A stretch of 64,000 bases of DNA, taken from IMG/VR virus record IMGVR_UViG_3300036760_000522, positions 62,001 to 126,000 of that record; one strand, written 5' to 3'. A program made the position numbers and the translations under genes. Positions 1,220 through 63,481 of the stretch are shown here, in pieces. Within the stretch, counting starts at the first letter, position 1, and every line of letters begins with the position of its first letter. Under the pieces are notes generated by a model. The model searched no databases, had not been told where the DNA came from, and saw only the letters and a program-made list of their open reading frames with translations.

Positions 1220-1780
1220 ATGTCGGACGGAGGAATCACTGTTTCGAAGACAACGACGGGGGCCTTTCTAATACAAGATATCCGTGTTTATGTCGAACAC
1301 GGCAAGGCGACTTTTATACCGGCTGACAAGGTTGTGTCGTCACGGGACCTGCACCGGGCTCTCTCAGACAAACAGCTCTTTCACTTGACGAGCAGCATGT
1401 TGCAACAACAGGCACAAGATCCTCGAGTAGCTGATCTGACTCGTACAAATGAGGATCTGCGACGTCAACTCGCCGAGCAGCAAGGCCAATGGCAACGGTC
1501 TGTAGAATCGTTGGAGAAGAAATTGGACAACGTCTTGGTAGCGGTGTCTCAACAACCGAAGGTCATTACCGTTCAGGCACCTGCGGCTGAGACAGCAGTA
1601 AAGATCGATTGGGAATTGAAGGAAGGAGCTAACGATATCGTGGACGAGACTGGAACATACGTTCCGAATATCCGGGCCAAAGCGGACAGTGTGAATGTGA
1701 CTGTGACCCCCAAGACCGAAGAAGTCTCTATTGAAGAGACTGCCAAACGCTTGCGACACACTCGCCGCAAACCCTTATGA
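1220..1780 (+). CDS. Hypothetical coiled-coil protein
   Basis: ATG at 1220 follows the upstream stop. Q/E/L-rich heptads. Contains repeat copy C. Confidence 0.6.
   Translation: MSDGGITVSKTTTGAFLIQDIRVYVEHGKATFIPADKVVSSRDLHRALSDKQLFHLTSSMLQQQAQDPRVADLTRTNEDLRRQLAEQQGQWQRSVESLEKKLDNVLVAVSQQPKVITVQAPAAETAVKIDWELKEGANDIVDETGTYVPNIRAKADSVNVTVTPKTEEVSIEETAKRLRHTRRKPL
1592..1622 (+). repeat. Dispersed CRISPR-repeat-like unit, copy C
   Basis: ACAGCAGTAAAGATCGATTGGGAATTGAAGG. Last 21 nt are identical to the reverse complement of 62922-62942; 23/31 ungapped identity to 58596-58626. Confidence 0.7.
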
Positions 1781-14999: not shown

Positions 15000-17900
15000 T
15001 GTGATGAGAGTCTTTCATTCTTCGGAAGACGAAGATGAAGTGGTTGGCGAATTCCAAGTCGCTGAGTACATCATTTTCCTGCTCGCCCTCGACACGTACA
15101 TGAGGTACGCTGAGGAATCTTCAGGAGTTGATGACATCGAAGACGCGATTATTCGACGAGGCTTGCAAATTCTGCGTCGGGCCGAAGCCGATCTCGAGAA
15201 CTATGGAAGCTTTCTAGAAGAGCATTTGTCGACTCCCGTCCAGAAACAAATGCTCAAGAGGGCTTTGTCGTTCAAGTCGTTCACCCCTAACGGCATGGCG
15301 CGTCGAGCATTGCAATTTCGGACCTTGCTATCCAGAGGCGGGGCACAAACAGTTCGAGCCGTTTTCGAATCCAACAAATACATCCGGCAGATGCGTGAAG
15401 CGATCGCAGCTTCGATGATGGAGGACGCGGACAAGGCTCTAGACATTTTTGCTGCAATGCCTCTCCGTAATTCACGGTTTCGTGTTTGGGTCGATGAGAG
15501 CGCAAAGCAAGCGGGCTCTGGTGAAAGCGCACCACAACCTGTTGAGGCAGCTTCGAACGAATCGTCGAGCGAAATCCGACAAGAGCTTCTGGTACAACAA
15601 GTCCAAAGCACAGTTGCCGTGGGAGCTGAAGCTGCTCGAGACGCCAAGGACTCACGATCAGCGCTCCTCGAGCAAACCGAGAATGAGGCGAGAGAAGCCG
15701 CCAAGCGGAGCATTGAGGTCAACCAACAGCGTGACGAGCCACTGACAAGATCCGAAGTCGTCGGTGTTGCAGCAGCGGCTGCTATGGCCGCAACAACTGA
15801 TCCGTCGAATCCTCAAAACATACCTGAGTCATTGAGGGCTCTTGACGACGAGCAACGAGCTGCTGCTCTGACCAACGGTCGCGTAGTTGTTGCAGCAGGA
15901 GCCGGCGCGGGAAAAAGTTTTACCTTGGTTCAGCGCGTCACCTACCTTGTGAAGGAACAGCGCGTAGGTCCTAGTCGGATTCTCGTAACGACCTTCAACA
16001 ACAAAGCCGCTGAAGAGTTGAAGGAGAAGATCGGGAAATCCCTTGGTGGACAGGTACTGCAACAAATGTCAGTCGGCACCATGCACTCGCTCTTCAGTCG
16101 GTTCATCTCAGAGCACGGGACACCTGAAGAACGCCAAGCAATGCAGGCTCCCAGGTTCATGCGTGACGGCCTCTCCATCGCAGGGGCCGTCCAAAGGATG
16201 TGGAGCGACTGCTACGGCACAAAGCGACCAACGCCACGCATGAGGACGATGTTGGCCTACAAGTCTCAGTGGTCAGGCAACGGCATCACGCCAGCGGAAG
16301 CTTTGGCCACGGTGCCGCCGAGAAAAGAAGCACAAGACGCCGCGACTTGGTACACCATGTACGAGGGGCTCAAAGGGACACTGCCCGACTGGAGGCCTCC
16401 TTGTCAGTCGAATTCCTATACAAGGTTCATGTCACAGAACCGAGGCGATGGAAGTCGACTCGGAGACTTCTCCGACATGCTCCTCATCTTCCGTGACATT
16501 TTGAAGCGATCGCCTGTCGTACAGTCTGCCGTACAAAAGATGTTTGACCACGTGATCGTGGATGAAGCACAGGACCGAAATACCATCATGGCTGAGATCA
16601 TTGAAATGATCTCAGGACACATCAACGAAGATTCACAAGATAAATCTCTGTGGATTGTTGGAGATGACAAGCAGTGTGTACACGTAGACACATTGGTAGA
16701 CGTTCCTGGGAATCGCAGAGTCAGAGCAGGTGGCTTGAGAGTTGGGGCACAGGTATTGTCTTACCGTAACAGCAAGGTCACACCCCAAATTGTCGAATCT
16801 GTAACGAAGTCAGACTGGGCTTACGGATTCAAGGTGGTTACGGCTTCAGGTAGGTCTCTGACGATGTCCCCCAATCACAGGATTTGGGCAAGCGAGATCA
16901 ATCCTGAGATCGAAGACCGTATTGTGTACTTGATGCACAGGCCCAATTTAGGCTTCCGTGTGGGGGTCACAACTAACGGGAGGACCAAGAAAGGCAGACG
17001 GAGCATTCGCAGTCGAATGGCGATGGAGAATGCCGACAAGTTGTGGATCCTGAAGTTGTGCGGGGACTACGAAGAAGCCCTCCTTGAGGAGAGTTCTTAT
17101 TCGTTGACCTACGGGATCCCGACTGTTGTATTCAACGGCGTGTGGCGAGACCTGAACCAGGACCGCTTAGATGAAGTTTTCCGGAGATTTGGCAAGAATG
17201 GTATGAAATTGTTGGAAGCATCCAACTTGGATTTCGACCACCCGCATGTGACGGCCTACGCCTCGGGTAACGGTCGCGTAGCACGACGTGTCATTCAGAT
17301 GTTGGCACACCACTCTAAGGGCACTTTGGTATCCTTAGAGTGGACGGGAGATGACTTGGATTCTCCTCTCAAAGCCGCGCAGGTGATTTTTCAAAGCACA
17401 GGTCCTCGACGGAGATTGCGCAAACACTGTAACAGCTATCGGGATGCCATTTCCTTTGCAACAACTTTGAAAGGTCTGACAGGAGCTATCATCAACCGTC
17501 GTCTGTCTCGGCATGAGTTGGAGGAGCCCTACCAATTGATCCCTGCTGCCGGGCTATTTCCTGGCATGCGACTAGTGGTTCTAGAAGGGGAGGATGCTGT
17601 GGATTCTGAAGAGATCACTTCTATCGACAGAGTGGAGGGCTCTTTCGTTGACCTGAGTGTCGATGATGCCTCAAACTTTTTCGGTAATGGGATCCTCAGC
17701 CACAACAGCATCAATGCATTCCAAGGTGCACGTGCTGAGTTGTTCACCTCATTGTGGGATCAACCTGGGTGGAAGACTAGAGCCATCACAACCAACTACC
17801 GATGTGAGCCTGAAATCGTTGACGCAGCGAACGCTTTGATCGCAAACAATGAAGATCAGATTCCGATGGAGGCTAGGGCCGATCCCCGCAAAGTTCGCGG

Positions 17901-19173
17901 CGTCGGTAGCATCAAAGTCTTCAATCCACCTGATGAAGCGTCGGCGGCTCTTGATACTGTCGAGGCCATCAAGCAAAATTTGGCTCTCGGAGCCAATGTC
18001 ACAGATCACGCTATTTTGTGTCGAACCAACAAAGAGCTTCACGCGTTTGAAACTGCGTGCATCATTCGTGGCGTTCCCTACGCACGCAAAGGGGCGTCGA
18101 GCTTTTTCGGATCCCCAGAAACCAAAGCAGTCCTTGGTTATGTACAACTCGTGACCGGAACAGATCCCATCAAGATGCAGGGAGCTTTGGCCGATGCCAT
18201 CAACAAACCCAATCGCTTCTTCATTGATCCAAAGAAGGGCGCAGAGGCTGTTGAGAGGGCTATCGTCGACTACGCACGGACAAAGCAACAAGACCCTAAG
18301 ACTATTGATCCTGTCGAAGCGTTGTCTGATCGCGGTTTCGTTAACGGACTTGCTCGTCGCCTTCTCGACTTGAAGGGTGGACGTGGTCGGGATTTTGATC
18401 ACAAGCTCCGTGAGCTGGGAGACGCTCTGAAGGAGATGCGTGCTTTGGCACAGACAGGGGGCTACACGACTCGAGACTTGTTCGATCAAATCTTGGGACT
18501 TGAAGGGACTGCAATCGTTGGCGGGAAGTTCATTGAGCAGACTTTCCGTGAAACACTGCAAGCTGATTTGAAGGATCGTGTCGGCGACGAAACGGATGAC
18601 GATGAAGAAGAGGAAGACGAAACTGATCCGACTCGCGGACTCGGCAACGTCTCATTCCTCTACAAGCTCTCTGAAATTGACCCCACTGACGAAGACGATG
18701 CCCTGACACCTCCCACAACTCCCGCTGGTTTCAAATCCAAGATGGAACGTTACGCGGCTAGAATGCGGGATCTTCGTACCGACGTCACTGCGTGGTACAA
18801 GAAACAGTCAGCTCTTCCACCCGAACAAAGAACGCCTCCACCAGGAACTTACGTAGGGACAGTGCATAGTGTAAAAGGCGCTCAATGGCCCAACACTTAT
18901 GTGTCAATGCCGGCTGGTAAGTTTCCTTTCAACATCCCAAAACGTCCAGGTGAACCGCCGCCTGATCCAGATGAAGTCAAAGACCAAGTCGAGGGAGAGC
19001 GTCGCCTTGCTTACGTCGCCTTGACTCGCGCTGCTAAGAATTTGACCATCATTTGCCCGGGCGAAGTGGGAGGAAAGCCCGCTGGCGTCAGCGTGTTCGT
19101 CGCTGAGGCAAAACTCAAAGTCGGAGAGAATGTCGTGGCGATCGGAACTGAATCACCAACGGCGGAGGGTTGA
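14983..19173 (+). CDS. UvrD/PcrA-like SF1 helicase with N-terminal extension and intein
   Basis: AGAGAGKS, TTFNNKAA, GTMHS, VDEAQD, VGDDKQ|SINAFQGA, TNYRC, LCRTN, TVHSVKG, ERRLAYVALTRA. Confidence 0.93.
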   Translation: MSTATDVMRVFHSSEDEDEVVGEFQVAEYIIFLLALDTYMRYAEESSGVDDIEDAIIRRGLQILRRAEADLENYGSFLEEHLSTPVQKQMLKRALSFKSFTPNGMARRALQFRTLLSRGGAQTVRAVFESNKYIRQMREAIAASMMEDADKALDIFAAMPLRNSRFRVWVDESAKQAGSGESAPQPVEAASNESSSEIRQELLVQQVQSTVAVGAEAARDAKDSRSALLEQTENEAREAAKRSIEVNQQRDEPLTRSEVVGVAAAAAMAATTDPSNPQNIPESLRALDDEQRAAALTNGRVVVAAGAGAGKSFTLVQRVTYLVKEQRVGPSRILVTTFNNKAAEELKEKIGKSLGGQVLQQMSVGTMHSLFSRFISEHGTPEERQAMQAPRFMRDGLSIAGAVQRMWSDCYGTKRPTPRMRTMLAYKSQWSGNGITPAEALATVPPRKEAQDAATWYTMYEGLKGTLPDWRPPCQSNSYTRFMSQNRGDGSRLGDFSDMLLIFRDILKRSPVVQSAVQKMFDHVIVDEAQDRNTIMAEIIEMISGHINEDSQDKSLWIVGDDKQCVHVDTLVDVPGNRRVRAGGLRVGAQVLSYRNSKVTPQIVESVTKSDWAYGFKVVTASGRSLTMSPNHRIWASEINPEIEDRIVYLMHRPNLGFRVGVTTNGRTKKGRRSIRSRMAMENADKLWILKLCGDYEEALLEESSYSLTYGIPTVVFNGVWRDLNQDRLDEVFRRFGKNGMKLLEASNLDFDHPHVTAYASGNGRVARRVIQMLAHHSKGTLVSLEWTGDDLDSPLKAAQVIFQSTGPRRRLRKHCNSYRDAISFATTLKGLTGAIINRRLSRHELEEPYQLIPAAGLFPGMRLVVLEGEDAVDSEEITSIDRVEGSFVDLSVDDASNFFGNGILSHNSINAFQGARAELFTSLWDQPGWKTRAITTNYRCEPEIVDAANALIANNEDQIPMEARADPRKVRGVGSIKVFNPPDEASAALDTVEAIKQNLALGANVTDHAILCRTNKELHAFETACIIRGVPYARKGASSFFGSPETKAVLGYVQLVTGTDPIKMQGALADAINKPNRFFIDPKKGAEAVERAIVDYARTKQQDPKTIDPVEALSDRGFVNGLARRLLDLKGGRGRDFDHKLRELGDALKEMRALAQTGGYTTRDLFDQILGLEGTAIVGGKFIEQTFRETLQADLKDRVGDETDDDEEEEDETDPTRGLGNVSFLYKLSEIDPTDEDDALTPPTTPAGFKSKMERYAARMRDLRTDVTAWYKKQSALPPEQRTPPPGTYVGTVHSVKGAQWPNTYVSMPAGKFPFNIPKRPGEPPPDPDEVKDQVEGERRLAYVALTRAAKNLTIICPGEVGGKPAGVSVFVAEAKLKVGENVVAIGTESPTAEG
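16675..17706 (+). mobile_element. Intein (344 aa) in helicase motif III
   Basis: Starts CVHVDTLV, has block B TMSPNHRIW, ends NFFGNGILSHN before Ser+1. Removal restores GDDKQSINAFQGA. Confidence 0.92.
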
Positions 19174-48597: not shown

Positions 48598-49136
48598 TAG
48601 AAAAGCGCCTCCTCTCTGGCTCGTCTCAATCTGAATGCTATGCCGGCCATCGACAGACCAAGCTCTGAAGCGATTTGTTTTTTGGTTTTTCCGTTCGCAC
48701 GCAGCACCAAAATCGCAGAGGTAGCTACAGACCTTTTTGAAGCAGGAACGCCTAGCGTCCTCATCCTCTGGGACACTTTGCGTCCAAACTCTTCCCCTAA
48801 ACGGTATCCGCTTGAACTCTTACCGCCGTCCGCCAGGTTGGTCAACCGGTCCCCTCGTATCCGGGCATCACGAATCAACTGGATCTCCAACGCGTCTAAC
48901 TCCTCGTGCGTGGAAGCTGTTCCTAAAATCTTGACTGTGGGTTTCAACTGCAACTGACGTAGAGACGCTAACCAACACTTACAATGAGATTTGGATACAC
49001 GAAGGTTATGGGCTGAAAGATGGTACCCGATTCGGTTCTTTAGCAGTTGTACAGTCTGACCGACGTACCTAAGTTCATCTGTACGCGGATCACACAGACC
49101 GTAGACCGTTCCGCATAATGCTTTTTCGCGTGCCAA
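48597..49136 (-). CDS. Free-standing GIY-YIG homing endonuclease
   Basis: VYGLCDPR...RYVGQT...R...H, LEIQLI, LTNLADGG, C-terminal HTH. Confidence 0.85.
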   Translation of the reverse strand: MAREKALCGTVYGLCDPRTDELRYVGQTVQLLKNRIGYHLSAHNLRVSKSHCKCWLASLRQLQLKPTVKILGTASTHEELDALEIQLIRDARIRGDRLTNLADGGKSSSGYRLGEEFGRKVSQRMRTLGVPASKRSVATSAILVLRANGKTKKQIASELGLSMAGIAFRLRRAREEALF

Positions 49137-52599: not shown

Positions 52600-53739
52600 T
52601 TAGCTAACGAGTTGGTAGTTGGGGAGAGACGCTTGAACGAGTTCTCGCTGTTGTGTGGATCCAAGTAGATCAACTGGTAGAGGAGCACGTATTCCCCGAG
52701 AAAGCTGTATGGACTTCTGCGAACGATTTTGAACGACAGAGTTGATCATGATGACGGTCGGATCTTCGTCACTCTGTTCGAGCGTTACAGAGAGGAGACG
52801 GAATGGGTATTCCTCGTCCGTCACGATTTGTCCGACGTTCTCTTCTTGTTGGCGCTTGATACTCTGCCATCGACGAAACGATTCGTGTATGTCAGAGACG
52901 ATGAGGTTTTGAATGAGCCCTGTTTGCTTTCGTCCCACGCTTTCCGTGATCCGCGTACCGTACCACGTGTGGAAAACGTTGGATCCTTGAACGGTCCAAA
53001 GAGCCTTGGTGAATTCTTGTAATAGTAGGTCTTCGTTGACGAGCGTAACGATCTCTCCGGATGAGTCGTAGCGCCAATCATTCTCGACTCCGAGCCCGCC
53101 ACAACGTCGACACTCTTGTCTGATCGTGATGTAGTCCATCTCGACGTAGTCGCGATAGCCTTGCAAAGGTTCGTCAAAGATCACAAGTCGTGTGGGCCGG
53201 TCACTCAAGGTATTGGGATCGTTGACCAACGTCCAAGCAGGTATGATGGTTTTCCCGCGCCAAAACCGATTCGTGTAAAGTCCGACGGTCGCAGCTAAAG
53301 TACTACCCGTCGTCTTCACGAAGATTGTGGAGGACTCCCCGTCTCGTGCAGTCAAGAGTCTAAGCCGTTGATGTGGCGCGATCACAAAGTAGGCGTCACG
53401 GATTTGTGTGTTCAACACATCTATGACCTGTTGTGACGAGACGCGGTTGCCTGAAGGTGCCGTCAATGCCTGCTCGAGACCTCCGTTGATCTTGACGACG
53501 AGTGTGTCGTTGGCGCCGCCTTGGATTTGAAATGGTCCAGAGATCGAACCAGAAGCAGTTGCCGCTGTAAATAGCCCGGTCGGATTTGCTTCAGCTTCCC
53601 CATTGACTCGAACGCGAACGGACCTTGAACTGGCAATTGGTCGTAGGGGTCTAACCGTTTGACGGTCCGACGACAGAAACAAGGGCTCCTCGACGACGCC
53701 GTGAGGACAAACTTGTTCAATGGCCCGATCGTAACTCAT
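52600..53739 (-). CDS. Baseplate wedge protein with a gp25-like C-terminal domain
   Basis: LLQEFTKALWT..GSNVFHTWYGT and QSDEDPT motifs. Confidence 0.65.
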   Translation of the reverse strand: MSYDRAIEQVCPHGVVEEPLFLSSDRQTVRPLRPIASSRSVRVRVNGEAEANPTGLFTAATASGSISGPFQIQGGANDTLVVKINGGLEQALTAPSGNRVSSQQVIDVLNTQIRDAYFVIAPHQRLRLLTARDGESSTIFVKTTGSTLAATVGLYTNRFWRGKTIIPAWTLVNDPNTLSDRPTRLVIFDEPLQGYRDYVEMDYITIRQECRRCGGLGVENDWRYDSSGEIVTLVNEDLLLQEFTKALWTVQGSNVFHTWYGTRITESVGRKQTGLIQNLIVSDIHESFRRWQSIKRQQEENVGQIVTDEEYPFRLLSVTLEQSDEDPTVIMINSVVQNRSQKSIQLSRGIRAPLPVDLLGSTQQRELVQASLPNYQLVS

Positions 53740-54502: not shown

Positions 54503-55090
54503 TCAGGCGGCTTCGAGATACGGACGCCATTCAAGCGGAGCGTTCCCGATGTCGACTCGAGGCCCGTGAAGAGGCAGAACTCTGGGTCGGTGAGGAACAA
54601 CAAGAAGCACCATTCCCGACTCCTCTAACGACAAGTCGGCCTTCTTCTCATTACACGAGCGGCAGGCAGTCACGATATTCTCCCAGACCGTTTTTCCGCC
54701 TCTCGCACGAGGCACGACGTGGTCATAGTTCAGCTCCGACATCGGGAGCTTCTTGTCGCAGTAAGAACACTTGAACCCGTCGCGTTGAAAGACGTTGATT
54801 TTCGAAAATTTGATCCCCGACTTCATCGCTTGAACCTTGCGGCGCAAGACGGCAACCGCAGGAACCTTGATCACGAGGCTCTCAGCGTCGGTCCCAATCA
54901 CGTGACTGAGAGCACGTTTCAACTCCGGAAAAGTGCGAAGCGTCTGTCGATCAATGTGCGCAAGGACTTCGTCGTACTGTGCGAGGACAGTGACAGTTCC
55001 CTTGAACATCTTGGTGACGGCGTCTTTCCAGTCAACGATCTCGTGTGGCCGATAATGCTGGTTCAGTACTAGTGTTTGTGCGTAGGACAT
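54503..55090 (-). CDS. HNH endonuclease
   Basis: RDGFKCSYC...DHVVPRARGG...WENIVTACRSCNEKK. Confidence 0.92.
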   Translation of the reverse strand: MSYAQTLVLNQHYRPHEIVDWKDAVTKMFKGTVTVLAQYDEVLAHIDRQTLRTFPELKRALSHVIGTDAESLVIKVPAVAVLRRKVQAMKSGIKFSKINVFQRDGFKCSYCDKKLPMSELNYDHVVPRARGGKTVWENIVTACRSCNEKKADLSLEESGMVLLVVPHRPRVLPLHGPRVDIGNAPLEWRPYLEAA

Positions 55091-56425: not shown

Positions 56426-56797
56426 ATGACGACTGTTGTATTAATCGTTGATGACGAGCACTTCGCGCTCCACGCTCTAGTGAAAAGTCTGGCTTGTGAT
56501 CACTACAAAGTCATGACGGCAAAGAGTGGTGAGGCAGCACTCAAACTGATCCGAAGCCACTTGGGCGAATCCATCAAACTCCTACTACTCGATTGGTCAC
56601 TGCGGGACATGAGCGGTCTGACTCTAGCAGAGGAAGCCAAGAAATTGATCCCCGACGTGAAAATCCTCTACGTCTCGGGCTACGCCGCAAGTGACAAGTC
56701 GCTAGAAAGTTGTTGGATCACCAAACCGTTCGACCAAAAGGAGCTACGTGCCCGCGTTTTGCGGGAGCTGAAAATTGGGGTGAGCGACGGGAATTGA
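56426..56797 (+). CDS. Stand-alone CheY-like response regulator
   Basis: LIVDDE, LLLLDW, VSGY, TKPF. Confidence 0.9.
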   Translation: MTTVVLIVDDEHFALHALVKSLACDHYKVMTAKSGEAALKLIRSHLGESIKLLLLDWSLRDMSGLTLAEEAKKLIPDVKILYVSGYAASDKSLESCWITKPFDQKELRARVLRELKIGVSDGN

Positions 56798-56847
56798 ACC
56801 CGCCTGAAACTTGGTCCACATCCAAGCGCCCTCACCAGAAGGCTCAC
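56776..56847 (-). pseudogene. tRNA-His(GTG), 5' acceptor strand lost
   Basis: D, anticodon and T arms, C73 and CCA present; the 5' end is fused to a truncated HNH ORF. Confidence 0.75.
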
Positions 56848-57118
56848 ACTTGCCACCCAAAAGGCTTATAGCAAACTCCTTGAAAAGGTAACGTCTAACC
56901 TTTTGTCTACATGACATGCAGAGTTTGTATAGGTTAGGCCTTGCACAGACCGCGCACAGTTTGGTTGAGGCTGTCTGACGTTGCGGGTATTCTACCTTGT
57001 GCCCCCGCCGAAATGGGGAGCACGTGAGACATTTTTTCCGACTACCGAGATTTCTCAACTTGCCGTCCACACGCACCATAAACGGGAACTTATTACCGCA
57101 ATCCAAACAGGTGAGCAC
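56844..57118 (-). pseudogene. Truncated zinc-finger/HNH endonuclease
   Basis: Several CxxC pairs, then AISLLGGKC, where the HNH core would start, runs straight into tRNA-His. Confidence 0.6.
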
Positions 57119-57144
57119 ACATGTGCACGACACCGAGAATCATT

Positions 57145-57221
57145 TGGCATCCCAGGATGGATTCGAACCACCAGCCGTCGAGTTAGAAGCTCGCCGCACG
57201 GTCCAATCGTGCTGCTGGGAC
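57145..57221 (-). tRNA. tRNA-Arg(TCT)
   Basis: Cloverleaf, loop CTTCTAA, CCA encoded. Confidence 0.9.
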
Positions 57222-57254
57222 AAATTCATTTATGGTCCTTCAAGGGCAAGGCTT

Positions 57255-57566
57255 ATGTATTCCTACGACCGACGCAAGACTGCGGCTGTGGACAAGGTTC
57301 CTATCTTCAACAAGTTTTCCTTGCAACTCACGACCGGTCAGGTCGAAAAGATGATACAGAAGCACTACGAGATCGAGGAAGGATCCCTAGAGTTCAGACC
57401 TGCCACAACGCATCGTGACACCGTTCATGTGGACTTCTTCTACAAACTGGCCGGCAAAGATGTCCAAAGAAGTAACGGCGTAGGATCAGGTACTGTGGTC
57501 CTACGGGCAGAGCATCAAGGGAAGCAGATCCAGATCACAGCATTTGTGAACATCGACGACAACTGA
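57255..57566 (+). CDS. Small protein beginning MYSYDRRKTAA, inserted antisense in the tRNA array
   Basis: ATG at 57255; TTTAT upstream. Confidence 0.6.
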   Translation: MYSYDRRKTAAVDKVPIFNKFSLQLTTGQVEKMIQKHYEIEEGSLEFRPATTHRDTVHVDFFYKLAGKDVQRSNGVGSGTVVLRAEHQGKQIQITAFVNIDDN

Positions 57567-57572
57567 ACGTTG

Positions 57573-57643
57573 TAGCGAGCGAGGGACTCGAACCCTCTCC
57601 GGCGCCGTATGAAAGCACTGGTCCTCCCTGGACCGAGCTCGCC
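57573..57643 (-). tRNA. tRNA-Met or Ile2 (CAT)
   Basis: Cloverleaf, loop TTCATAC, no encoded CCA. Confidence 0.8.
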
Positions 57644-57654
57644 AATTTGGTGTT

Positions 57655-57728
57655 TGGCTGGGGCGCCAGGGATCGAACCTGGATCAACTGGTCCAAAGCC
57701 AGCCGTCCTACCTTTAGACGACACCCCA
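57655..57728 (-). tRNA. tRNA-Gln(TTG)
   Basis: Cloverleaf, loop CTTTGGA, CCA. Confidence 0.92.
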
Positions 57729-57733
57729 AAAAT

Positions 57734-57815
57734 TGGCGGAGGTCGAATCGAACGCCACACCCGAAAGTGCCATCAGTTTAGCAAACTGCGGATCACCCAG
57801 TGATCGTCAACCTCC
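57734..57815 (-). pseudogene. tRNA-Ser(GCT) with about 4 nt missing from the T-stem 3' strand
   Basis: Loop TTGCTAA, long variable arm; TGGCG-TTCGATT-C lacks its pairing partner. Confidence 0.7.
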
Positions 57816-57822
57816 ATTAATT

Positions 57823-57905
57823 TGGCGGAGAGGACAGGAATCGAACCCGCTACGGAATTACCGCGACCGTTTTCAAGACGGTTTGCCACCATTAGCCACC
57901 TCTCC
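57823..57905 (-). tRNA. tRNA-Ser(TGA)
   Basis: Loop CTTGAAA, long variable arm, GCCA end. Confidence 0.88.
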
Positions 57906-58227
57906 AAAAGACCTTGAGCTGTTCGCTCATTGAGACACGAGACCGTTGTTCTTGTCTCGTCTGATGATTCCACGAGTCTTTCGACCCGGTTGCCTTGTGA
58001 GGCTTACAAAACAGACAACCGCCTCGAGCGTTTTTTCGTTTCTTGCGTTTGTGGTGCACAGGATCTCCTTGCCGCCGTCAGCGGCTTGTTAGTGATCCTG
58101 CGATGCTTCATCATTTCGACTTTTGGTTGTTGTAGGAAGGGCAGCCTGGTCTCTTGCATTTCAATTTCTCCACCTGTCTTCAGACGGGTGGAGACTTCAG
58201 GGTACCACAGTTTACAAGGACCGGGTC

Positions 58228-58548
58228 CTAGTTTCGCTTGAGAGCTTCTCTGAGAAACTCTTTTGTTGCGTTGATTAGCTCAACGTCACTGACTAGCGCA
58301 TCGACAAATTCAGGAGCCCGCAAGTGCAGCACACGGGTCGTGATAGCCGGTAGCCCGCGCTCCTTCACGTATTCGTACATAGCAAGCACCAACATCATGG
58401 CGACGCCACGAGGAGCAGATTTTTCTTGACCGGCACTAGCCAACAACAGAGGATAAAGGTACTGACGAAAATGCGATTGATCGTTGATCTTCAGTAGTCG
58501 CTCAAGCATCTCTTCACGGCTCGGTAGCGTGATGTCAGTTTCGATCAT
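58228..58548 (-). CDS. Hypothetical protein
   Basis: Likely start MIETD at 58548; the longer ORF call overlaps tRNA-Ala. Confidence 0.55.
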   Translation of the reverse strand: MIETDITLPSREEMLERLLKINDQSHFRQYLYPLLLASAGQEKSAPRGVAMMLVLAMYEYVKERGLPAITTRVLHLRAPEFVDALVSDVELINATKEFLREALKRN

Positions 58549-58595
58549 TACGCAAACAACACCAAACTTCAGATTTTTGTTGATCACCCGGACAA

Positions 58596-58626
58596 GTAAC
58601 AGTAGAAAACGGTCGGGAATTGAAGG
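58596..58626 (+). repeat. Dispersed CRISPR-repeat-like unit, copy B
   Basis: GTAACAGTAGAAAACGGTCGGGAATTGAAGG, preceded by an AT-rich flank and abutting a tRNA 5' fragment. Confidence 0.65.
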
Positions 58627-58638
58627 TGCTACAGGGAC
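58627..58638 (-). pseudogene. 5' stub of a tRNA (GTCCCTG-TA-GCA)
   Basis: Starts 3 nt after the CCA of tRNA-Ala and resembles the 5' end of tRNA-Arg in this window. Confidence 0.5.
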
Positions 58639-58641
58639 ATT

Positions 58642-58717
58642 TGGTGGAACCGAAGGGAATTGAACCCTCAACCTCTTGTGTGCAGGACAAGCGCTCTCCC
58701 AATTGAGCTACGGCCCC
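58642..58717 (-). tRNA. tRNA-Ala(TGC)
   Basis: G3:U70, loop CCTGCAC (C33), CCA. Confidence 0.9.
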
Positions 58718-58727
58718 AAGATTTGTT

Positions 58728-58805
58728 TGGTGCTCCCACGGGGCGACGATCCCCGTTTTCCGCCTTGAAAGGGCAGTGTCCTAACCAAACGTAGACGATG
58801 AGAGC
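58728..58805 (-). tRNA. tRNA-Glu(TTC)
   Basis: Loop CTTTCAA; atypical T-loop ATCGTCG; CCA. Confidence 0.85.
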
Positions 58806-59057
58806 AGTGGTGTGTTTGGCGTCCAATGGCCTCTAGGAGGCGTAGAGATCCCAATTTTTCTGCACCGCTTTTTGACAGCTGAAGAAGAAACTCCGAACTC
58901 CTTGGTTGGACACGCAGCATGTGGCCGAACAAGCCAGGAGTAATGTCGCGAGCATCACATTCTATGACAAGGCACTACTCGACACGGAGCACAAGGATAT
59001 CTACTTGCAAGCTCTCGGGGACTTCTATCACCCCGAGACGCCCGCCCTGTGAGACAG

Positions 59058-59130
59058 TAGTGCTCCAGAGACTCGAACTCTGCACGATCCGCTTATCAGA
59101 CGAACCAGGTCAACCCGACCGTCGAGCACC
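59058..59130 (-). tRNA. tRNA-Ile(GAT), atypical D arm
   Basis: Loop CTGATAA; T arm CAGAG-TTCGAGT-CTCTG. Confidence 0.75.
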
Positions 59131-59175
59131 AAAACTCAATTCATGCTAAAATCACGAAATGGTCACACTTACAAG

Positions 59176-59248
59176 CAGGGGTGAACGGAATCGAACCGTC
59201 TCGACAAGGGTTTTGGAGGCCCTCCGGCTTACCCACAGCCACACCCCT
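59176..59248 (-). tRNA. tRNA-Trp(CCA)
   Basis: Loop CTCCAAA; acceptor AGGGGTG/CACCCCT. Confidence 0.85.
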
Positions 59249-59419
59249 AGACCGTCAATTTACATCTTTGTTGCTCTTCTCGTTGCAGCCAACGCAGCCA
59301 TTTTTTGGTACGGGTGGCGCCAGTATCAAAAGCAAGAGGAAGGTGTCGTCATCCAATGCACTGTGCGAGCGGCACAATTCCACTATCGTTTGTCCGACGT
59401 CTGTACGGGCCCGTACAGC

Positions 59420-59857
59420 TCAGATAGAACCTGTGCCGAGAAGTTGGATCTTTGTCAGCAGCAGTAACAAGTACTTGATCGCCAGCCCATTGCACAAAAT
59501 GTGCATGAGGTTGTCAGTGATGATGAGCAACCAAGTGCTCAACCAAGGTGGGAGATTGGCGGGATAACCTGTACCCGAGCAATCCTTCCAAGAAGGATTG
59601 CTACCTGGAGGCGCCAAAAAGTTCTTGAACCAACAAACGTGCCGGGCGAGTCGCCAACGATCAATCACGAAATGTGTACCGGCAATCGTGAGGAGCACTT
59701 CGACGCTCTGACTCAACACTAAAAACGGCAACGTGTACAGCGCGACATGCGCGAGTGCGGCTCGGGTCTTAGTGACTTTTTCCGTTGCCATCCACTGGCT
59801 TTGGAGGACGTAGTCACCGATCACGTGCAGCACAAGTTGGTCGGCAGTTACAAGCAT
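59420..59857 (-). CDS. DUF3307-like membrane protein
   Basis: HVIGDYVLQSQWMA...H...HFVIDRW...DNLMH. Confidence 0.8.
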   Translation of the reverse strand: MLVTADQLVLHVIGDYVLQSQWMATEKVTKTRAALAHVALYTLPFLVLSQSVEVLLTIAGTHFVIDRWRLARHVCWFKNFLAPPGSNPSWKDCSGTGYPANLPPWLSTWLLIITDNLMHILCNGLAIKYLLLLLTKIQLLGTGSI

Positions 59858-59941
59858 GATTAGACAACACCGAAAGGAGAGGCCTCCCCTCAAGGCCCTT
59901 TACTCAGAAAATCATCAACACCATAGGTACCTCCTTTCGAT

Positions 59942-60015
59942 TGGCGCTGCGTACGGGAATCGAACCCGTTTCGCCTCTTAGACAGAGAGGTCGCGATCCA
60001 ATCGCGTCACGCAGC
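59942..60015 (-). tRNA. tRNA-Asp(GTC)
   Basis: Loop CTGTCTA (U37), GCCA end. Confidence 0.88.
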
Positions 60016-60049
60016 ATTTGAAACACGGTGTTACACCTGACGATATCGC

Positions 60050-60646
60050 ATGATCGGACTCACCAGGCGACAAGAAATGGTCCTGAACGTCGTTCGGGAT
60101 CGTATCAGGAAATTCGGTTACCCGCCTTCCCTGCGAGAACTTTGTGTCGCTTTAGATTTACACTCCACGCACGGCATCAGTCAACACCTGGACGCACTCG
60201 AACGCAAAGGCCACATCCAGCGTACACGTCAAGGCGCGAGTCGCGGGATCAAGCTCATTGAAAGCACCACAGTGTCAGAAACTCAAACGGTCAAAGTTTA
60301 TTCGCGAACTTTCGAAGAAGGGAACGTTGTCGACACCATCCAAGTCGGTTCCTCAATGATCAACAAGCCTGTCGTCGGGTTCCTGATGCGCGGAGACGCA
60401 CTCGAAAGATCAGGGATTCTAGATGGAGACTATTTGCTCGTTCAACGCGGTGCCTTCATTACTTCTGGGAGCTTGGTTTGCTTGCACGTTGGCGATGAGG
60501 TCTGCGCCAGGTACTACCACAAGGAGAGCGACTACGTGCGATTCGATGCCGCTCACCCAGAAAAGTCCTCCATACTTGTCCGGAACGCAGACTTCAAGGC
60601 GTCGATGCTTGAGGGCCTCGTCCATAGTGTTTATCGGAAGTGCTAG
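60050..60646 (+). CDS. lexA: LexA-like repressor lacking autoproteolysis residues
   Basis: LTRRQ...GYPPSLREL...HLDALERKG winged HTH; S24-like domain with GDAL instead of GDSM. Confidence 0.85.
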   Translation: MIGLTRRQEMVLNVVRDRIRKFGYPPSLRELCVALDLHSTHGISQHLDALERKGHIQRTRQGASRGIKLIESTTVSETQTVKVYSRTFEEGNVVDTIQVGSSMINKPVVGFLMRGDALERSGILDGDYLLVQRGAFITSGSLVCLHVGDEVCARYYHKESDYVRFDAAHPEKSSILVRNADFKASMLEGLVHSVYRKC

Positions 60647-60648
60647 GT

Positions 60649-60939
60649 ATGGAAGCTAAACGAGTCGTAGCCCGGTTCCGTTCCTTGAAGGAAGCAGCGA
60701 AGCCGTCGACCGAAGCTGTCTCGGAGATTCAAGCAGCGATCGAAGCTCTCAAGAGGATCGCTAAAGGTAGCGGCAACCCGAAGCGTCTCTTGTTTTCAGC
60801 AGTTTGGAGTCTTGGAGCCGCTGCGGAGAAGATGGGGCAAGAAACGAGGGTATCCTCAGCGCTCTATCACGCTGCTGGCATCGTTAACCAGACTTGGTCG
60901 GTCCAAGACACCCGCGACTACTTCTCGAAAGGCGCCTAA
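60649..60939 (+). CDS. Small protein with N-terminal AKRVVARF motif
   Basis: ATG at 60649; TTTAT 14 nt upstream. Confidence 0.6.
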   Translation: MEAKRVVARFRSLKEAAKPSTEAVSEIQAAIEALKRIAKGSGNPKRLLFSAVWSLGAAAEKMGQETRVSSALYHAAGIVNQTWSVQDTRDYFSKGA

Positions 60940-60978
60940 GCTACCCGGTCCACGCTAAACCCGGGTTGGTGGGAGAAA

Positions 60979-61341
60979 TTGAGACACGACAACATTTTCG
61001 AACTCCTGGAAGCTGTGCGCCAACACAAGCTCGAAACCAGAGAGTGCTTCCTGCCCATCAACTCCGTCAAGGACCGTGACGTCGGCTTCACCACTGCTGA
61101 CGGGGACGGGCCTGCCGTGACTTGGACGATGCCGACCAAGTTGGCGAAAGAGAGTGCCATCGAACGCGGAACACCAGAGGCGCGGAGAATCAAAGATCTT
61201 CTCGGCAACCACATGGGGAGAATTCAACTCCTCACGGAGCTGAGAGCCGGAACCTTGGACTATGGGATCCCAAACACTCAGCCTGTGATTGTTGTCGAGG
61301 AGTCGGAAGAGGAAGCTTTCCTGATGGGGATCGTCGACTAG
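60979..61341 (+). CDS. Hypothetical protein
   Basis: GGGAG RBS and TTG start; hairpin at 61351-61366 downstream. Confidence 0.5.
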   Translation: MRHDNIFELLEAVRQHKLETRECFLPINSVKDRDVGFTTADGDGPAVTWTMPTKLAKESAIERGTPEARRIKDLLGNHMGRIQLLTELRAGTLDYGIPNTQPVIVVEESEEEAFLMGIVD

Positions 61342-61394
61342 GGTCAATTAGCCCTAACGGTAGGGCAACCTGGTAGCCTCTCAACGTCTGACGG

Positions 61395-62651
61395 TTAAAA
61401 AACTGTCGATGCCCAAATAGCAAAGGGAACGTCTGCGAGCAAGAAGCGATGTGGATTGAAGAAGCGATCGCTCTCGCCGAAGTCCTCGTTCACGAACACG
61501 TCGTAGTCCGCGTTTTCGTAAGCGGCTTCCGTGAACTCAAGCTCAGCACCGAACCCGCCATGCGCACCAAGCGCCAAGACTTTGCCCTCGAAGGCCGCTA
61601 GGTTGTCCGTGTACGTCGTATCGCCTGCCAGGCCGCACGTAATGTCCCTGATTGTGGTCAGGCTGGCGTAGGAGTCGACGATGCCACCAATCTTGAGGTA
61701 ACGAGGTTCTGAGGCGAAGTCGACACCGGTTGAGTCTCCTGCGAGGAAGTGGAAGCTTGGCGTCGGCCAGTTGGGATTGTCGAGATGTTGTGTGCTGACC
61801 ACGTAGAAGACCTGGTCATTCGTCGCGTTCACGATCCCAAGCTCAGCAAGCTTGGCCGCCAAGAACTCAAGCCCTGGGATCCCCGGCACTGGCGAGATCC
61901 CTGTTGGGTCAGCTTGCTTCAGTTGAAACAGCAACGCGAAGATTTGCGGAGTTGGGTCGAAGTAGATCCCGAGAGAGGTGACGAACTGTAGGAGCCCACA
62001 GTTGGGTGCCGAGAACGCCTGCTGTGTTGCGTCGGCGACCATCGAACCCTCCCAAAGGAACAAGCCCGCATAGTGGTCAGGGAACGCGTTGACGGTCGCT
62101 TGTGCGAACATGGCGCCACCGACGTAGCCTCCAATCACGACCTTCTGGCTGGGGTTGTAGGCGGCAAGGACAAGGCCCCTCACGAACTCAGCGTCGTCGA
62201 TCCTGGTCTGAACGGTCCAACTGCCCATCGCGAGACATCCGGTTGACTCACACGTCCCTGGGGCTTGCTTCGACAGCCTGTCGTCGATCACCCAGACATC
62301 GAACCCTAGCGTTGCGAGGGAGCCCAGAAAGGACTTCCGGTAGTTGGTCGTCTCTGTGAGCTCGTACCATCGGACGTCGTATCCAAATGGTCCGTGAAGA
62401 ATGACCGGCTTGTGTGAGTACGAAGACTTGACGCGAGTCACCCCAAACACGTTCAGAGGATCTGTCCCCTGCTGGACGGTGTGCTTGGTTCGTGTGAGAC
62501 CCGTCGCAGGGTTGTCGATCACCGTGGCAGTGACAGAGTAGTCGCTGAGTGCTTGTGTGACCACCTCGACATCTTGTGAGGCTTGTTGATCAGGTGCGCC
62601 TGAGCACGCAAAAAGTAGGGCAACGGCGAGTGTGATTTGGATGGTTTTCAT
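61395..62651 (-). CDS. Alpha/beta-hydrolase-fold lipoprotein, probably inactive
   Basis: Lipobox-like LFAC, VILHG, GFDVWVIDDR; elbow GYVGG lacks Ser. Confidence 0.7.
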   Translation of the reverse strand: MKTIQITLAVALLFACSGAPDQQASQDVEVVTQALSDYSVTATVIDNPATGLTRTKHTVQQGTDPLNVFGVTRVKSSYSHKPVILHGPFGYDVRWYELTETTNYRKSFLGSLATLGFDVWVIDDRLSKQAPGTCESTGCLAMGSWTVQTRIDDAEFVRGLVLAAYNPSQKVVIGGYVGGAMFAQATVNAFPDHYAGLFLWEGSMVADATQQAFSAPNCGLLQFVTSLGIYFDPTPQIFALLFQLKQADPTGISPVPGIPGLEFLAAKLAELGIVNATNDQVFYVVSTQHLDNPNWPTPSFHFLAGDSTGVDFASEPRYLKIGGIVDSYASLTTIRDITCGLAGDTTYTDNLAAFEGKVLALGAHGGFGAELEFTEAAYENADYDVFVNEDFGESDRFFNPHRFLLADVPFAIWASTVF

Positions 62652-62697
62652 GATGTGGGGAAACCTACGATCCAAAATACGATCAAGTCAATATTTA

Positions 62698-62773
62698 TGG
62701 AGCGGGTGACCGGAATCGAACCGGCCGACATTTGCTTGGAAGGCAACGACCTCGCCATTGAGGTGACACCCGC
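62698..62773 (-). tRNA. tRNA-Gly(TCC)
   Basis: Loop CTTCCAA, U73, CCA. Confidence 0.9.
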
Positions 62774-62781
62774 GAGAATAG

Positions 62782-62853
62782 CTGTAGGGGAGGGATTCGA
62801 ACCCCCGATCTGTCGGTTAACAGCCGACCGCTTTACCGCTTAGCCACCCTACA
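62782..62853 (-). tRNA. tRNA-Asn(GTT)
   Basis: Loop CTGTTAA, G73. Confidence 0.9.
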
Positions 62854-62854
62854 A

Positions 62855-62921
62855 TGGCGTCCCATGACGGATTCGAACCGTCGCTACCTGCGTGAGAAGC
62901 AAACGTCCTGAGCCACTAGAC
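62855..62921 (-). pseudogene. tRNA-Glu(CTC), positions 1-9 missing
   Basis: Begins at D-stem GTC immediately after repeat copy A; loop TTCTCAC; CCA present. Confidence 0.75.
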
Positions 62922-62951
62922 CCTTCAATTCCCAATCGATCTGATCCCTAC
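62922..62951 (-). repeat. Dispersed CRISPR-repeat-like unit, copy A
   Basis: GTAGGGATCAGATCGATTGGGAATTGAAGG, with an AT-rich upstream flank similar to copy B. Confidence 0.7.
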
Positions 62952-63093
62952 TTACGCGGATCACAAAACAAAGAAACAAGTTTGTGGGCAGATCGGTACC
63001 TTGGTGGGCACCGATCTGCCACACGAGTGAAAAACACGAATTGTCAAAAAGCAAGGTCCTCGAAAGGACTTTTGAAGAGACCTGAAGTCTCAG

Positions 63094-63165
63094 TTCCAGG
63101 AGCTGGAATCGAACCAGCGTTCCGTCGTTCAGAGCGACGTGGCCTACCAATTAGCCGATCCTGGA
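63094..63165 (-). tRNA. tRNA-Gln(CTG)
   Basis: Loop CTCTGAA; full cloverleaf. Confidence 0.9.
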
Positions 63166-63181
63166 ATACGAACTTCTTCTG

Positions 63182-63254
63182 TGGGCTGCCCGAGAATCGA
63201 ACTCGGAACTTTCAGGTTAAGAACCTGCTACTCTACCTGTTGAGTTAGCAACCC
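63182..63254 (-). tRNA. tRNA-Lys(CTT)
   Basis: Loop TTCTTAA. Confidence 0.9.
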
Positions 63255-63260
63255 ATCAAG

Positions 63261-63333
63261 TGGAGGTGACAGGGATCGAACCTGCAATCTACGTGTTAAA
63301 AGCACGTTGCATTACCAATTTAGCTACACCTCC
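63261..63333 (-). tRNA. tRNA-Lys(TTT)
   Basis: Loop CTTTTAA. Confidence 0.88.
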
Positions 63334-63398
63334 ATTCGTTGTGTGCCCGCCTTCACGGGCTTGTGTTTCACTGTTTTCATGATCGTGTCTTTCTTTTG

Positions 63399-63481
63399 TG
63401 GGTCCGTGAAGAGTTGAACTTCTTAGCCAATGGCCCCACGTTTACAGCGTGAGTCGCGTTCCGACGACGAACCCCGGACCC
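63399..63481 (-). tRNA. tRNA-Tyr(GTA), atypical D region
   Basis: Loop CTGTAAA, variable arm, acceptor GGGTCCG/CGGACCC. Confidence 0.75.

What the first reader, a model, noticed from the sequence alone, without database searches (positions are those of the whole stretch)
58561..62986. Dispersed solitary CRISPR-repeat-like units sitting at tRNA breakpoints
Seen: three ~31-nt units share the 3' end GGGAATTGAAGG, at 1592-1622 (+, copy C), 58596-58626 (+, copy B) and 62951-62922 (-, copy A). A and C share 21 identical nt; B and C match 23/31 without gaps. A and B start with GTA and have similar AT-rich upstream flanks (CAAACTT...TTTTGT(T)GATC...CG...AA). A is joined directly to tRNA-Glu(CTC) lacking nt 1-9. 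B is joined to a 12-nt tRNA 5' stub. Known: GT...AATTGAA(A/G)G of about 30 nt is a common CRISPR repeat form, and phages carry mini-arrays and solitary repeat units that act as RNA anti-CRISPRs. Inference: these are either leader-plus-repeat units fused to the phage's own DNA by integration-type events, solitary-repeat RNAs expressed from the tRNA region, or ends of an unrecognised mobile element. No cas gene is visible in the window.
Basis: partly seen in the sequence, partly recalled or inferred. Interest (0 to 1): 0.85.

Follow-up and report, generated by a model that had tools for sequence, protein, structure and literature searches.

The report
CRISPR-repeat-ended insertion scars in phage
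A 301-kb phage and its one known sister each carry four copies of a short sequence ending in the same 12 letters that end some real CRISPR repeats; several copies are recent small insertions, two of which broke tRNA genes, so they may be scars of phage-CRISPR encounters, although no matching host array was found.

Summary
GGGAATTGAAGG occurs exactly at all three stated places, and the tRNA breaks are genuine.

The only known sister phage shows how each copy arose:
- Copy A is a 54-nt insertion that replaced nt 3-9 of a tRNA-Glu(CTC) that is intact in the sister.
- Copy B is ancestral. In the window a 630-bp deletion starts right after it. It removed one ORF and four tRNAs and left a 12-nt tRNA-Arg stub.
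- Copy C is an in-frame 21-nt insertion in a gene, identical to the last 21 nt of A.

Three further loci exist: D (32 nt plus an 8-bp duplication), E and F. Each phage holds four copies. No other IMG/VR contig holds more than one.

At A, B and D the polymorphic breakpoint lies exactly at the 3' end of the 12-mer. At C and F it lies there too, but flanking AAGG/GAAG repeats blur it by up to 4 nt.

At least four unrelated CRISPR repeat families end in this 12-mer. None matches the units further upstream. I found no array, no cas gene and no matching spacer.

Verdict: these are not an array and not solitary repeat units by the published criteria. My best guess (0.35) is leader/repeat ends captured from host CRISPR arrays next to protospacers. 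A non-CRISPR mini mobile element is nearly as likely.

The parts
62922..62975 (-). Copy A: a 54-nt insertion (TTCTTTG...GGGAATTGAAGG).
   Evidence: The sister phage has TAATGGG here instead, which is tRNA-Glu nt 3-9 read on the + strand. The last 21 nt equal copy C.
62855..62921 (-). tRNA-Glu(CTC) remnant, nt 10-76: a pseudogene with no 5' acceptor strand.
   Evidence: ARAGORN nt with the anticodon at position 26. Rfam matches model positions 9-63. No cloverleaf forms and the fold z-score is +0.59. The gene is intact in L004 13692-13767.
58570..58626 (+). Copy B with its T-rich upstream part. It is orthologous to B' in the sister phage.
   Evidence: L004 6118-6185 is about 90% identical. In L004 it lies between a tRNA-Arg-like 5' fragment and a possible acceptor 3' strand plus CCA.
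58627..58638 (-). The 12-nt stub of tRNA-Arg(TCG). 58626|58627 is the junction of a 630-bp deletion.
   Evidence: L004 carries 630 nt here: an 82-aa ORF, tRNA-Cys, tRNA-Val, tRNA-Leu and the rest of tRNA-Arg(TCG).
1602..1622 (+). Copy C: an in-frame 21-nt (7-codon) insertion in the gene at about 1220-1780. The 12-mer is 1611-1622.
   Evidence: The sister's ortholog (P0004, L022 6001-6540, 83% aa identity) is 7 residues shorter and lacks these 21 nt.
62987..63020 (.). An 11-bp-stem hairpin just upstream (on the minus strand) of the A insertion. It is conserved in the sister and forms part of the near-identical left flank.
   Evidence: Read. The 125-nt flank shows only 2 differences from L004.

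Best explanation
The units are short patches of foreign DNA (17 to about 66 nt). They look like 5'-truncated copies of one or a few donor sequences that share a fixed 3' end, (CGATT)GGGAATTGAAGG. They entered unrelated sites in this phage lineage several times.

Shown:
- Copy A entered as an insertion in the window's lineage. Copy C is best read the same way; its polarity is inferred only from its 21-nt identity with A. Copies D and F differ between the sisters with polarity unresolved.
- Copies B and E predate the split of the two phages.
- At A, B and D the breakpoint between the two genomes falls exactly after GAAGG. At C and F it also falls there, with up to 4 nt of ambiguity from flanking AAGG/GAAG repeats.
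- A and the ancestral B event each destroyed a tRNA gene.
- A later 630-bp deletion starting at B removed four more tRNAs.

Inferred mechanism:
- The donor was the leader-proximal end of a host CRISPR array, meaning the leader end plus the first repeat.
- The phage was broken at, or recombined with, a site that matched a spacer.
- Repair copied leftwards from the spacer into the repeat, and sometimes into the leader, before rejoining by microhomology.
- This would place the repeat terminus exactly where the PAM had been, which explains a junction fixed at the repeat|protospacer boundary and copy lengths of 17, 18, 21, 32, 54 and 66 nt.

Under this reading the units are scars, possibly escape alleles, and not working genes.
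For: - Insertion status of each copy: A, C, D, F, B deletion.
- All polymorphic breakpoints lie at the 12-mer's 3' end (same calls). For C and F this holds within the ambiguity caused by flanking AAGG/GAAG repeats.
- A, C, E and F share the 17-mer CGATTGGGAATTGAAGG. D has 16 of 17. They differ upstream of it.
- There are four copies in each of the two sister phages. Every other contig among the 82 loci hit has one copy, which my own estimate (not a computed control) puts at chance level.
- A's donor is not elsewhere in the 301-kb contig.
- The exact 12-mer ends at least four unrelated real CRISPR repeat families. One sits next to Csa3 and Cas3, another next to Cas7 and a Cas6e-like protein.
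- In the alleles without the unit, the three letters just 5' of the junction are TTA (A) and TTC (D), which is PAM-like.
- A's and B's long copies have a T-rich stretch upstream of a roughly 30-nt unit, as a leader would (weak).
- D is 32 nt with a small hairpin, a typical repeat size.
Against: - No CRISPR array with a repeat matching the units beyond 12-14 nt turned up in GTDB species genomes, JGI metagenome contigs or IMG/VR.
- No spacer from the arrays that end in the 12-mer hits the phage.
- The host is unknown.
- Upstream parts differ between A/C, D and B, so several donor variants are needed.
- E spans a stop codon.
- F may be native coding sequence, because the sister's allele has the length seen in distant homologs.
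- B and F share a second 12-mer, CGGACAAGTAAC, which hints at a donor inside the phage.
- C's left flank is TAA, not TTN.
- Patch capture of this kind has not, to my knowledge, been described.
- Only two genomes of the lineage exist.
Confidence: 0.35

Rival explanations
1. A non-CRISPR miniature mobile sequence with a defined 3' end. Candidates are 5'-truncated retro-copies made by target-primed reverse transcription of a small RNA, or the end of a non-autonomous transposon. The match to CRISPR repeat ends would then be coincidence.
For: - Fixed 3' end with variable 5' extent (54, 32, 21, 18, 17 nt).
- An 8-bp target duplication at D.
- A 7-nt target deletion with 2-nt microhomology at A.
- The family is restricted to this lineage.
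- Insertions occur in either orientation and in all kinds of site.
Against: - No terminal inverted repeats and no consistent target duplication.
- No RT or transposase among the genes with Pfam hits in the roughly 70 kb examined.
- No full-length master copy in the 301-kb contig.
- The 12-mer would have to equal a recurrent CRISPR repeat terminus by chance. My rough estimate for that is 1e-4 to 1e-3, not computed.
Confidence: 0.3
2. Functional solitary repeat RNAs (RNA anti-CRISPRs), or crRNA-like guides expressed from the tRNA island, that bind host Cas proteins.
For: - The last 8 nt, ATTGAAGG, resemble the type I/III 5' handle (ATTGAAAG/C) as I recall it, and the full 12-mer ends real repeat families.
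- B is conserved in both phages, with a weak TTGATC-17-TAGAAA promoter-like pair just upstream (read).
- D lies 28 nt upstream of an ORF.
Against: - Fails the published solitary-repeat-unit criteria, which are at least 90% identity over at least 90% of a repeat and an intergenic position.
- Only 12-17 nt are conserved between copies.
- C, E and F lie in or overlap coding sequence.
- The promoter scan finds nothing at A or B.
- No fold signal.
- No expression data. The run search was made with kind 'any', not an RNA-specific search, and it listed only DNA runs.
Confidence: 0.1
3. A phage-native regulatory or recombination motif, similar to the promoter/stem-loop cassettes (PeSLs) that shuffle genes in T4-type phages, or a nicking site. 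Ordinary recombination with unsampled relatives would have produced the mosaic.
For: - The tRNA island is hyperplastic, with more than 15 indels between the two phages in 20 kb.
- B' and D lie upstream of small ORFs on the same strand.
- E and perhaps F are native.
- B and F share a second 12-mer.
Against: - There are only four copies per genome, against about 50 for PeSLs, and no shared sigma-70 promoter plus stem-loop.
- A, C and D are tiny insertions that brought no ORF with them.
- An in-frame 21-nt copy inside a gene is not what a promoter cassette predicts.
- This does not explain why breakpoints fall at the same nucleotide.
Confidence: 0.15
4. Chance similarity with no common origin.
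For: The shared core is short.
Against: - Three exact 12-mers against 0.37 expected hits when 1 mismatch is allowed.
- A 21-nt identity between A and C.
- Four copies per genome in two phages, against one per contig in all other IMG/VR contigs hit.
- Repeated coincidence with indel breakpoints.
Confidence: 0.02

Closest known systems
Solitary repeat units / RNA anti-CRISPRs (Camara-Wilpert et al. 2023, PMC10651486; first catalogued by Faure et al. 2019)
   Same: Single CRISPR-repeat-like sequences in a phage genome, with no cas genes and not in an array. The 3' end is identical to real repeat termini.
   Different: Only 12 of about 30 nt match any repeat found. Copies agree with each other only over 12-21 nt. 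Half of them lie in or overlap coding sequence. No promoter or expression evidence. They sit at insertion/deletion junctions.
Recombination between phages and CRISPR loci through spacer-protospacer homology (Varble et al. 2019, recalled from memory), and phage integration into CRISPR repeats (Varble et al., bioRxiv 10.1101/2020.10.09.333658)
   Same: The proposed mechanism uses spacer-protospacer homology to join phage DNA to array DNA, which puts a repeat end directly against phage sequence.
   Different: The known cases give large phage-CRISPR hybrids or prophages inside arrays. Here the products would be 17-66-nt patches fixed in a lytic-type jumbo phage. No donor array is known.
PeSL mobile regulatory cassettes of T4-type phages (Arbiol et al. 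2010, PMC2839356)
   Same: Short dispersed repeats concentrated in a hyperplastic region, at the boundaries of differences between two sister phages.
   Different: PeSLs are about 100 bp with about 50 copies per genome. They are sigma-70 promoter plus stem-loop units and flank whole ORFs. Here there are four copies, no common promoter or stem-loop, and the repeat itself is what got inserted.
5'-truncated retro-copies made by target-primed reverse transcription (LINE-like behaviour; established knowledge)
   Same: A constant 3' end, variable 5' truncation, and variable target duplication or deletion with microhomology at the 5' junction.
   Different: No RT was seen, no source RNA gene is known, and I know of no precedent in phages.

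Membership tests
CRISPR array | Two or more near-identical repeats at regular spacing of about 55-80 nt, separated by unique spacers | tested here: not met
   Copies lie 4.3 kb, 57 kb and more than 100 kb apart. A periodic 12-mer search of IMG/VR finds no array in either phage contig.
CRISPR array | Repeat terminus of the ATTGAA(A/G)(G/C) type, as in type I/III repeats | tested here: met
   The exact 12-mer ends the repeats of at least four unrelated real arrays. Two of these are next to type I cas genes.
Solitary repeat unit / Racr | At least 90% identity over at least 90% of a known CRISPR repeat (SRUFinder rule, PMC10651486) | tested here: not met
   The best repeats found share 12-14 nt of about 30. 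No curated repeat database was available, so a closer repeat could exist.
Solitary repeat unit / Racr | Intergenic position, downstream of a promoter, expressed as a small RNA | tested here: inconclusive
   A, B and D are intergenic. C, E and F are in or overlap coding sequence. The promoter scan is negative at A and B. No RNA data; the one run search used kind 'any' and listed only DNA runs.
Solitary repeat unit / Racr | Host carries a Cas system of the matching subtype | not testable with these tools
   The host is unknown. Only two genomes of the lineage exist.
PeSL-type regulatory cassette | Many copies, each with a sigma-70 promoter plus a stem-loop, upstream of ORFans | tested here: not met
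   Four copies per genome. No shared promoter or stem-loop. Definition taken.
Split tRNA gene (Nanoarchaeum type) | The 5' piece is followed by a sequence complementary to the leader of the 3' piece, and the two pieces rebuild one tRNA | tested here: not met
   The complementary 12-mers are present. However, the stub is tRNA-Arg(TCG) by synteny, and it pairs with the tRNA-Glu 3' acceptor strand at only 5 of 7 positions (read). The sister phage has both genes intact.
Transposon / MITE | Terminal inverted repeats and a target duplication of constant length | tested here: not met
   No inverted ends. The duplication is 8 bp at D only. A has a 7-nt deletion and C has none.

The most novel reading that the evidence does not exclude
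Each unit plus the phage sequence to its right works as a ready-made crRNA-like gene: a repeat handle followed by a 'spacer' made of the phage's own DNA. Host Cas complexes loaded with it would spare the carrier, whose target is flanked by the repeat end instead of a PAM. They would attack sister phages that still have the uninterrupted allele, for example the intact tRNA-Glu preceded by TTA. The insertions would then be weapons in conflicts between phages as well as escape marks.
Probability: 0.07. Interest if true: 0.95.

Novelty: new variant of a known kind. Interest (0 to 1): 0.65.

Why it matters
If the patches come from host CRISPR arrays, phage genomes would carry a readable record of past CRISPR hits. 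It would also reveal a new escape route: replacing the PAM side of a target with the repeat's own end. That would let the host and the CRISPR type be inferred from the phage sequence alone. If the patches do not come from CRISPR, this is an unusually small insertion element that is active in a jumbo phage, breaks tRNA genes and slips in-frame into proteins. In either case it explains how this phage lost tRNA-Glu(CTC) function and four of the tRNAs its sister keeps.

Tried and rejected
- Split or trans-spliced tRNA. The stub is followed by the reverse complement of the leader of the truncated tRNA-Glu. Rejected because the stub is tRNA-Arg(TCG) by synteny and the acceptor strands do not pair.
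- Inversion between A and B rebuilding a tRNA. The geometry only swaps equivalent junctions.
- Origin from a tRNA T-arm. The 12-mer is 10/12 identical to the reverse complement of the tRNA-Ala and tRNA-His T-arms. Rejected because every copy has CC where G52-G53 must be, and no T-stem pairing exists.
- A as a copy of B, D, E or F. Flank alignments are not significant.
- A's left 33 nt as patchwork from elsewhere in the window. Only chance-level 11-13-mers were found.
- Sigma-70 promoter or terminator at the units, and a shared upstream motif in the window. Nothing found.
- Rfam match for the tRNA-Arg-like fragment in L004. None. An in-register alignment to tRNA-Arg(TCG) supports it instead.
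- Spacers of the Bdellovibrionales array and of ten arrays ending in the 12-mer, searched against the phage. No hits.
- More relatives. The LexA query found nothing in metagenome contigs. The flanking proteins have only one relative among 5.8 billion proteins. There is no close phage in GenBank.
- The cluster of six differences in the tRNA-Glu anticodon stem within 32 nt of junction A. I first read this as a spacer-length import. I downgraded it because the neighbouring tRNA-Asn is even more diverged, so stem changes are common here.
- TTA at F as a third PAM-like flank. Dropped because the polarity of F is unresolved.


Full report
**What the window is.** It is part of IMGVR_UViG_3300036760_000522, a 301,550-bp phage contig. 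The contig carries a baseplate J-like protein, a LexA-like repressor, a UvrD-type helicase with an intein, an HNH endonuclease and a tRNA island. Only one relative exists in all the collections searched. It is IMGVR_UViG_3300037424_001177, plus a 12-kb contig from the same sample, at about 90% nucleotide and 79-94% protein identity. No GenBank phage is close.

**Check of the observation.**
- The 12-mer GGGAATTGAAGG is exact at the three stated places. Allowing 1 mismatch gives 4 hits against 0.37 expected.
- A and C share 21 nt. B and C match 23/31.
- tRNA-Glu(CTC) lacks its first nine nucleotides.
- A 12-nt tRNA 5' stub follows B on the other strand.
- An independent Logan assembly is identical over 20 kb.
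- Contigs from two further samples cover both junctions without a difference. A fourth sample holds the sister's alleles.

The sequence is therefore real and exists as two alleles in nature.

**What the sister phage shows at each locus.**
- *A.* The sister has an intact 76-nt tRNA-Glu(CTC). The window has 54 nt (62922-62975) in place of tRNA nt 3-9. A GT could belong to either side at the left junction. The 125 nt to the left differ at only two positions. The remnant does not fold as a tRNA.
- *B.* The unit is present in both phages at the same place (about 90% identity). In the sister it is followed by AAGG and then the reverse complement of a tRNA-Arg-like 5' fragment (nt 1-35). That fragment aligns in register to tRNA-Arg(TCG), a score reached by 0.7% of random 40-mers. 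After it come an 82-aa ORF and tRNA-Cys, Val, Leu and Arg(TCG). On the other side of the unit the sister has CGAGGGGGACACCA, which could be the matching acceptor 3' strand plus CCA. The ancestral B event therefore looks like a 66-nt insertion that replaced the middle of a tRNA gene. In the window, a 630-bp deletion runs from the last G of the 12-mer to nt 12 of tRNA-Arg(TCG).
- *C.* The sister's ortholog is exactly 7 codons shorter. The extra 21 nt in the window are the 21 nt shared with A.

**Further copies.**
- *D* (sister only). It is 32 nt, ATCAGGCGTATTCGCCGACTGGGAATTGAAGG, flanked by an 8-bp direct repeat GTAGTAAG, 28 nt upstream of an ORF. The source phage has a single GTAGTAAG there.
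- *E* (both phages). The 12-mer spans the stop codon of a 126-aa ORF that follows a GroEL-like gene.
- *F* (sister only). It lies antisense inside a 473-aa gene. A patch of about 18-22 nt differs from the source allele and is 3 nt longer, and identity resumes right after GAAGG. Which F allele is ancestral is unresolved.
- A, C, E and F share the 17-mer CGATTGGGAATTGAAGG. D has CGACT, B has CGGTC and B' has CGGGC.
- A search of all 2.9 million IMG/VR contigs for CGRNY plus the 12-mer gave 82 loci. Four are in the source contig and four are in the sister contig. Every other contig has one, which by my estimate (not a control) is about the number expected by chance.
- In roughly 33 kb of aligned sequence, six small indels of 15-60 nt were listed, and A, C and D are three of them (with D).

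**The central regularity.** At A, B and D the breakpoint between the two genomes lies exactly at the 3' end of GGGAATTGAAGG. At C and F it lies there too, but the next letters are AAGG (also after B') or GAAG, so the true junction could be up to 4 nt further right. The length of unit sequence to the left varies: 17, 18, 21, 32, 54 and about 66 nt. That is the signature of a donor with a fixed end. The end could be physical (a transposon or RNA terminus) or defined by homology that begins there. The donor of A is not elsewhere in the 301-kb contig.

**The CRISPR question.**
- I searched for the 12-mer recurring at 40-70-nt gaps.
- In 185,579 species genomes this found one array, a Bdellovibrionales type II-B locus. 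There the 12-mer sits in the middle of a 36-nt repeat.
- In JGI metagenome contigs it found at least four unrelated repeat families in which the 12-mer is the exact end of the repeat:
  - ...CGCGCAGTAT[12-mer];
  - GAACCCAATATA[12-mer], next to Csa3 and Cas3;
  - ...CCCTTTTATA[12-mer], next to Cas7 and a Cas6e-like protein;
  - GAAGAGTCTCAAGA[12-mer].
I estimate roughly, without a computation, that a random 12-mer would be one with a probability of 1e-4 to 1e-3.
- Against a CRISPR link: none of these repeats resembles the units upstream of the 12-mer, none of their spacers hits the phage, and neither phage contig holds an array.
- The source metagenome does not seem to be in the metagenome collection, because the phage's own LexA was not found there. 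The absence of the host's array is therefore weak evidence.
- By the published rule for solitary repeat units the units do not qualify.

**Mechanism.** I favour, at about 0.35, capture from the leader-proximal end of host arrays. Spacer-protospacer homology would define the right junction. Copying would run leftwards into the repeat, and in A and B into the leader. The left junction would be illegitimate: 2-nt microhomology and a 7-nt loss at A, and an 8-nt duplication at D.

Points in favour:
- It accounts for the fixed junction, the variable length and the CRISPR terminus.
- It accounts for the T-rich stretch upstream of a roughly 30-nt unit in the two long copies (weak).
- It accounts for TTA and TTC immediately 5' of the junction in the unit-free alleles of A and D. 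That is where a 5' PAM would lie, and the insertion replaces it with AGG.

Points that remain unshown or count against it:
- No donor array, spacer match or host is known.
- Several donor variants are needed.
- E and perhaps F look native.
- B and F share a second exact 12-mer, CGGACAAGTAAC.

A non-CRISPR mini-element with a defined 3' end, such as a 5'-truncated retro-copy or a transposon end, explains the anatomy almost as well (0.3). Its weakness is that the CRISPR terminus would be coincidence and that no enzyme or master copy was seen. Functional RNA anti-CRISPRs (0.1) and a native regulatory or recombination motif (0.15) fit less well.

**Consequences for the phage.**
- tRNA-Glu(CTC) is a pseudogene.
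- tRNA-Arg(TCG), Leu(TAG), Val(TAC) and Cys(GCA) were lost at B.
- An older tRNA-Arg-like gene was destroyed by the ancestral B event.
- tRNA genes are not a special target, since C, D, E and F lie elsewhere. Orientation relative to transcription is mixed, which argues against an RNA-level (type III anti-tag) role.

Noticed in passing
window 56,800-63,400 versus L004 4,300-14,200: The tRNA island is highly plastic. ARAGORN tRNAs in the sister's 20.6-kb stretch against 14 in the window. His, Phe, Thr, Pro, Cys, Val, Leu and Arg(TCG) are missing from the window, and more than 15 indels separate the two. tRNA-Asn differs at many stem positions and carries a 12-nt extra arm in the sister.
   Followed up: partly
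window 62701-62773 (-): A tRNA found by Rfam (40.4 bits) but missed by ARAGORN. By eye it is tRNA-Gly(TCC). Weaker tRNA-like Rfam hits lie at 56782-56849 and 57738-57815.
   Followed up: no
window 60050-60646 (+): A LexA-like repressor (LexA DNA-binding domain plus S24 peptidase domain) is encoded in the middle of the tRNA island of a 301-kb phage. It is 94% identical in the sister.
   Followed up: no
window 14956-19173 (+): A UvrD-type helicase of 1405 aa with a weak, below-threshold intein splicing-domain hit between its helicase halves.
   Followed up: no
window 54503-55090 (-): An HNH endonuclease gene (precomputed Pfam hits HNH and HNH_5 on the 195-aa product in L065) lies 3.5 kb from copy B. 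The sister has an extra 540 bp next to it.
   Followed up: no
window 58587-58598 and L066 about 4253-4264 (-): B and F share a second exact 12-mer, CGGACAAGTAAC, 14 and 20 nt upstream of the main 12-mer. Zero or one of 400 shuffles reach this score. In F it is native coding sequence. Unexplained.
   Followed up: partly
window 49082-49094 (-) and 52946-52958 (+): GTGATCCGCGTAC occurs at two places in the baseplate genes, and its first 12 nt also occur inside the A insertion. This is probably chance.
   Followed up: partly
L004 6110-6128: The sister has 19 extra nt (GATTTGGTGTCCCCCTCGG) just left of B'. On the other strand these read like a tRNA acceptor 3' strand plus CCA. They are absent from the window.
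   Followed up: partly
L015 (Bdellovibrionales MAG JAWLHR010000011.1): A type II-B CRISPR locus (Csx12-type Cas9, Cas1, Cas4). Its 36-nt repeat contains two imperfect copies of GGAATTG(A/G)AAG in tandem.
   Followed up: no
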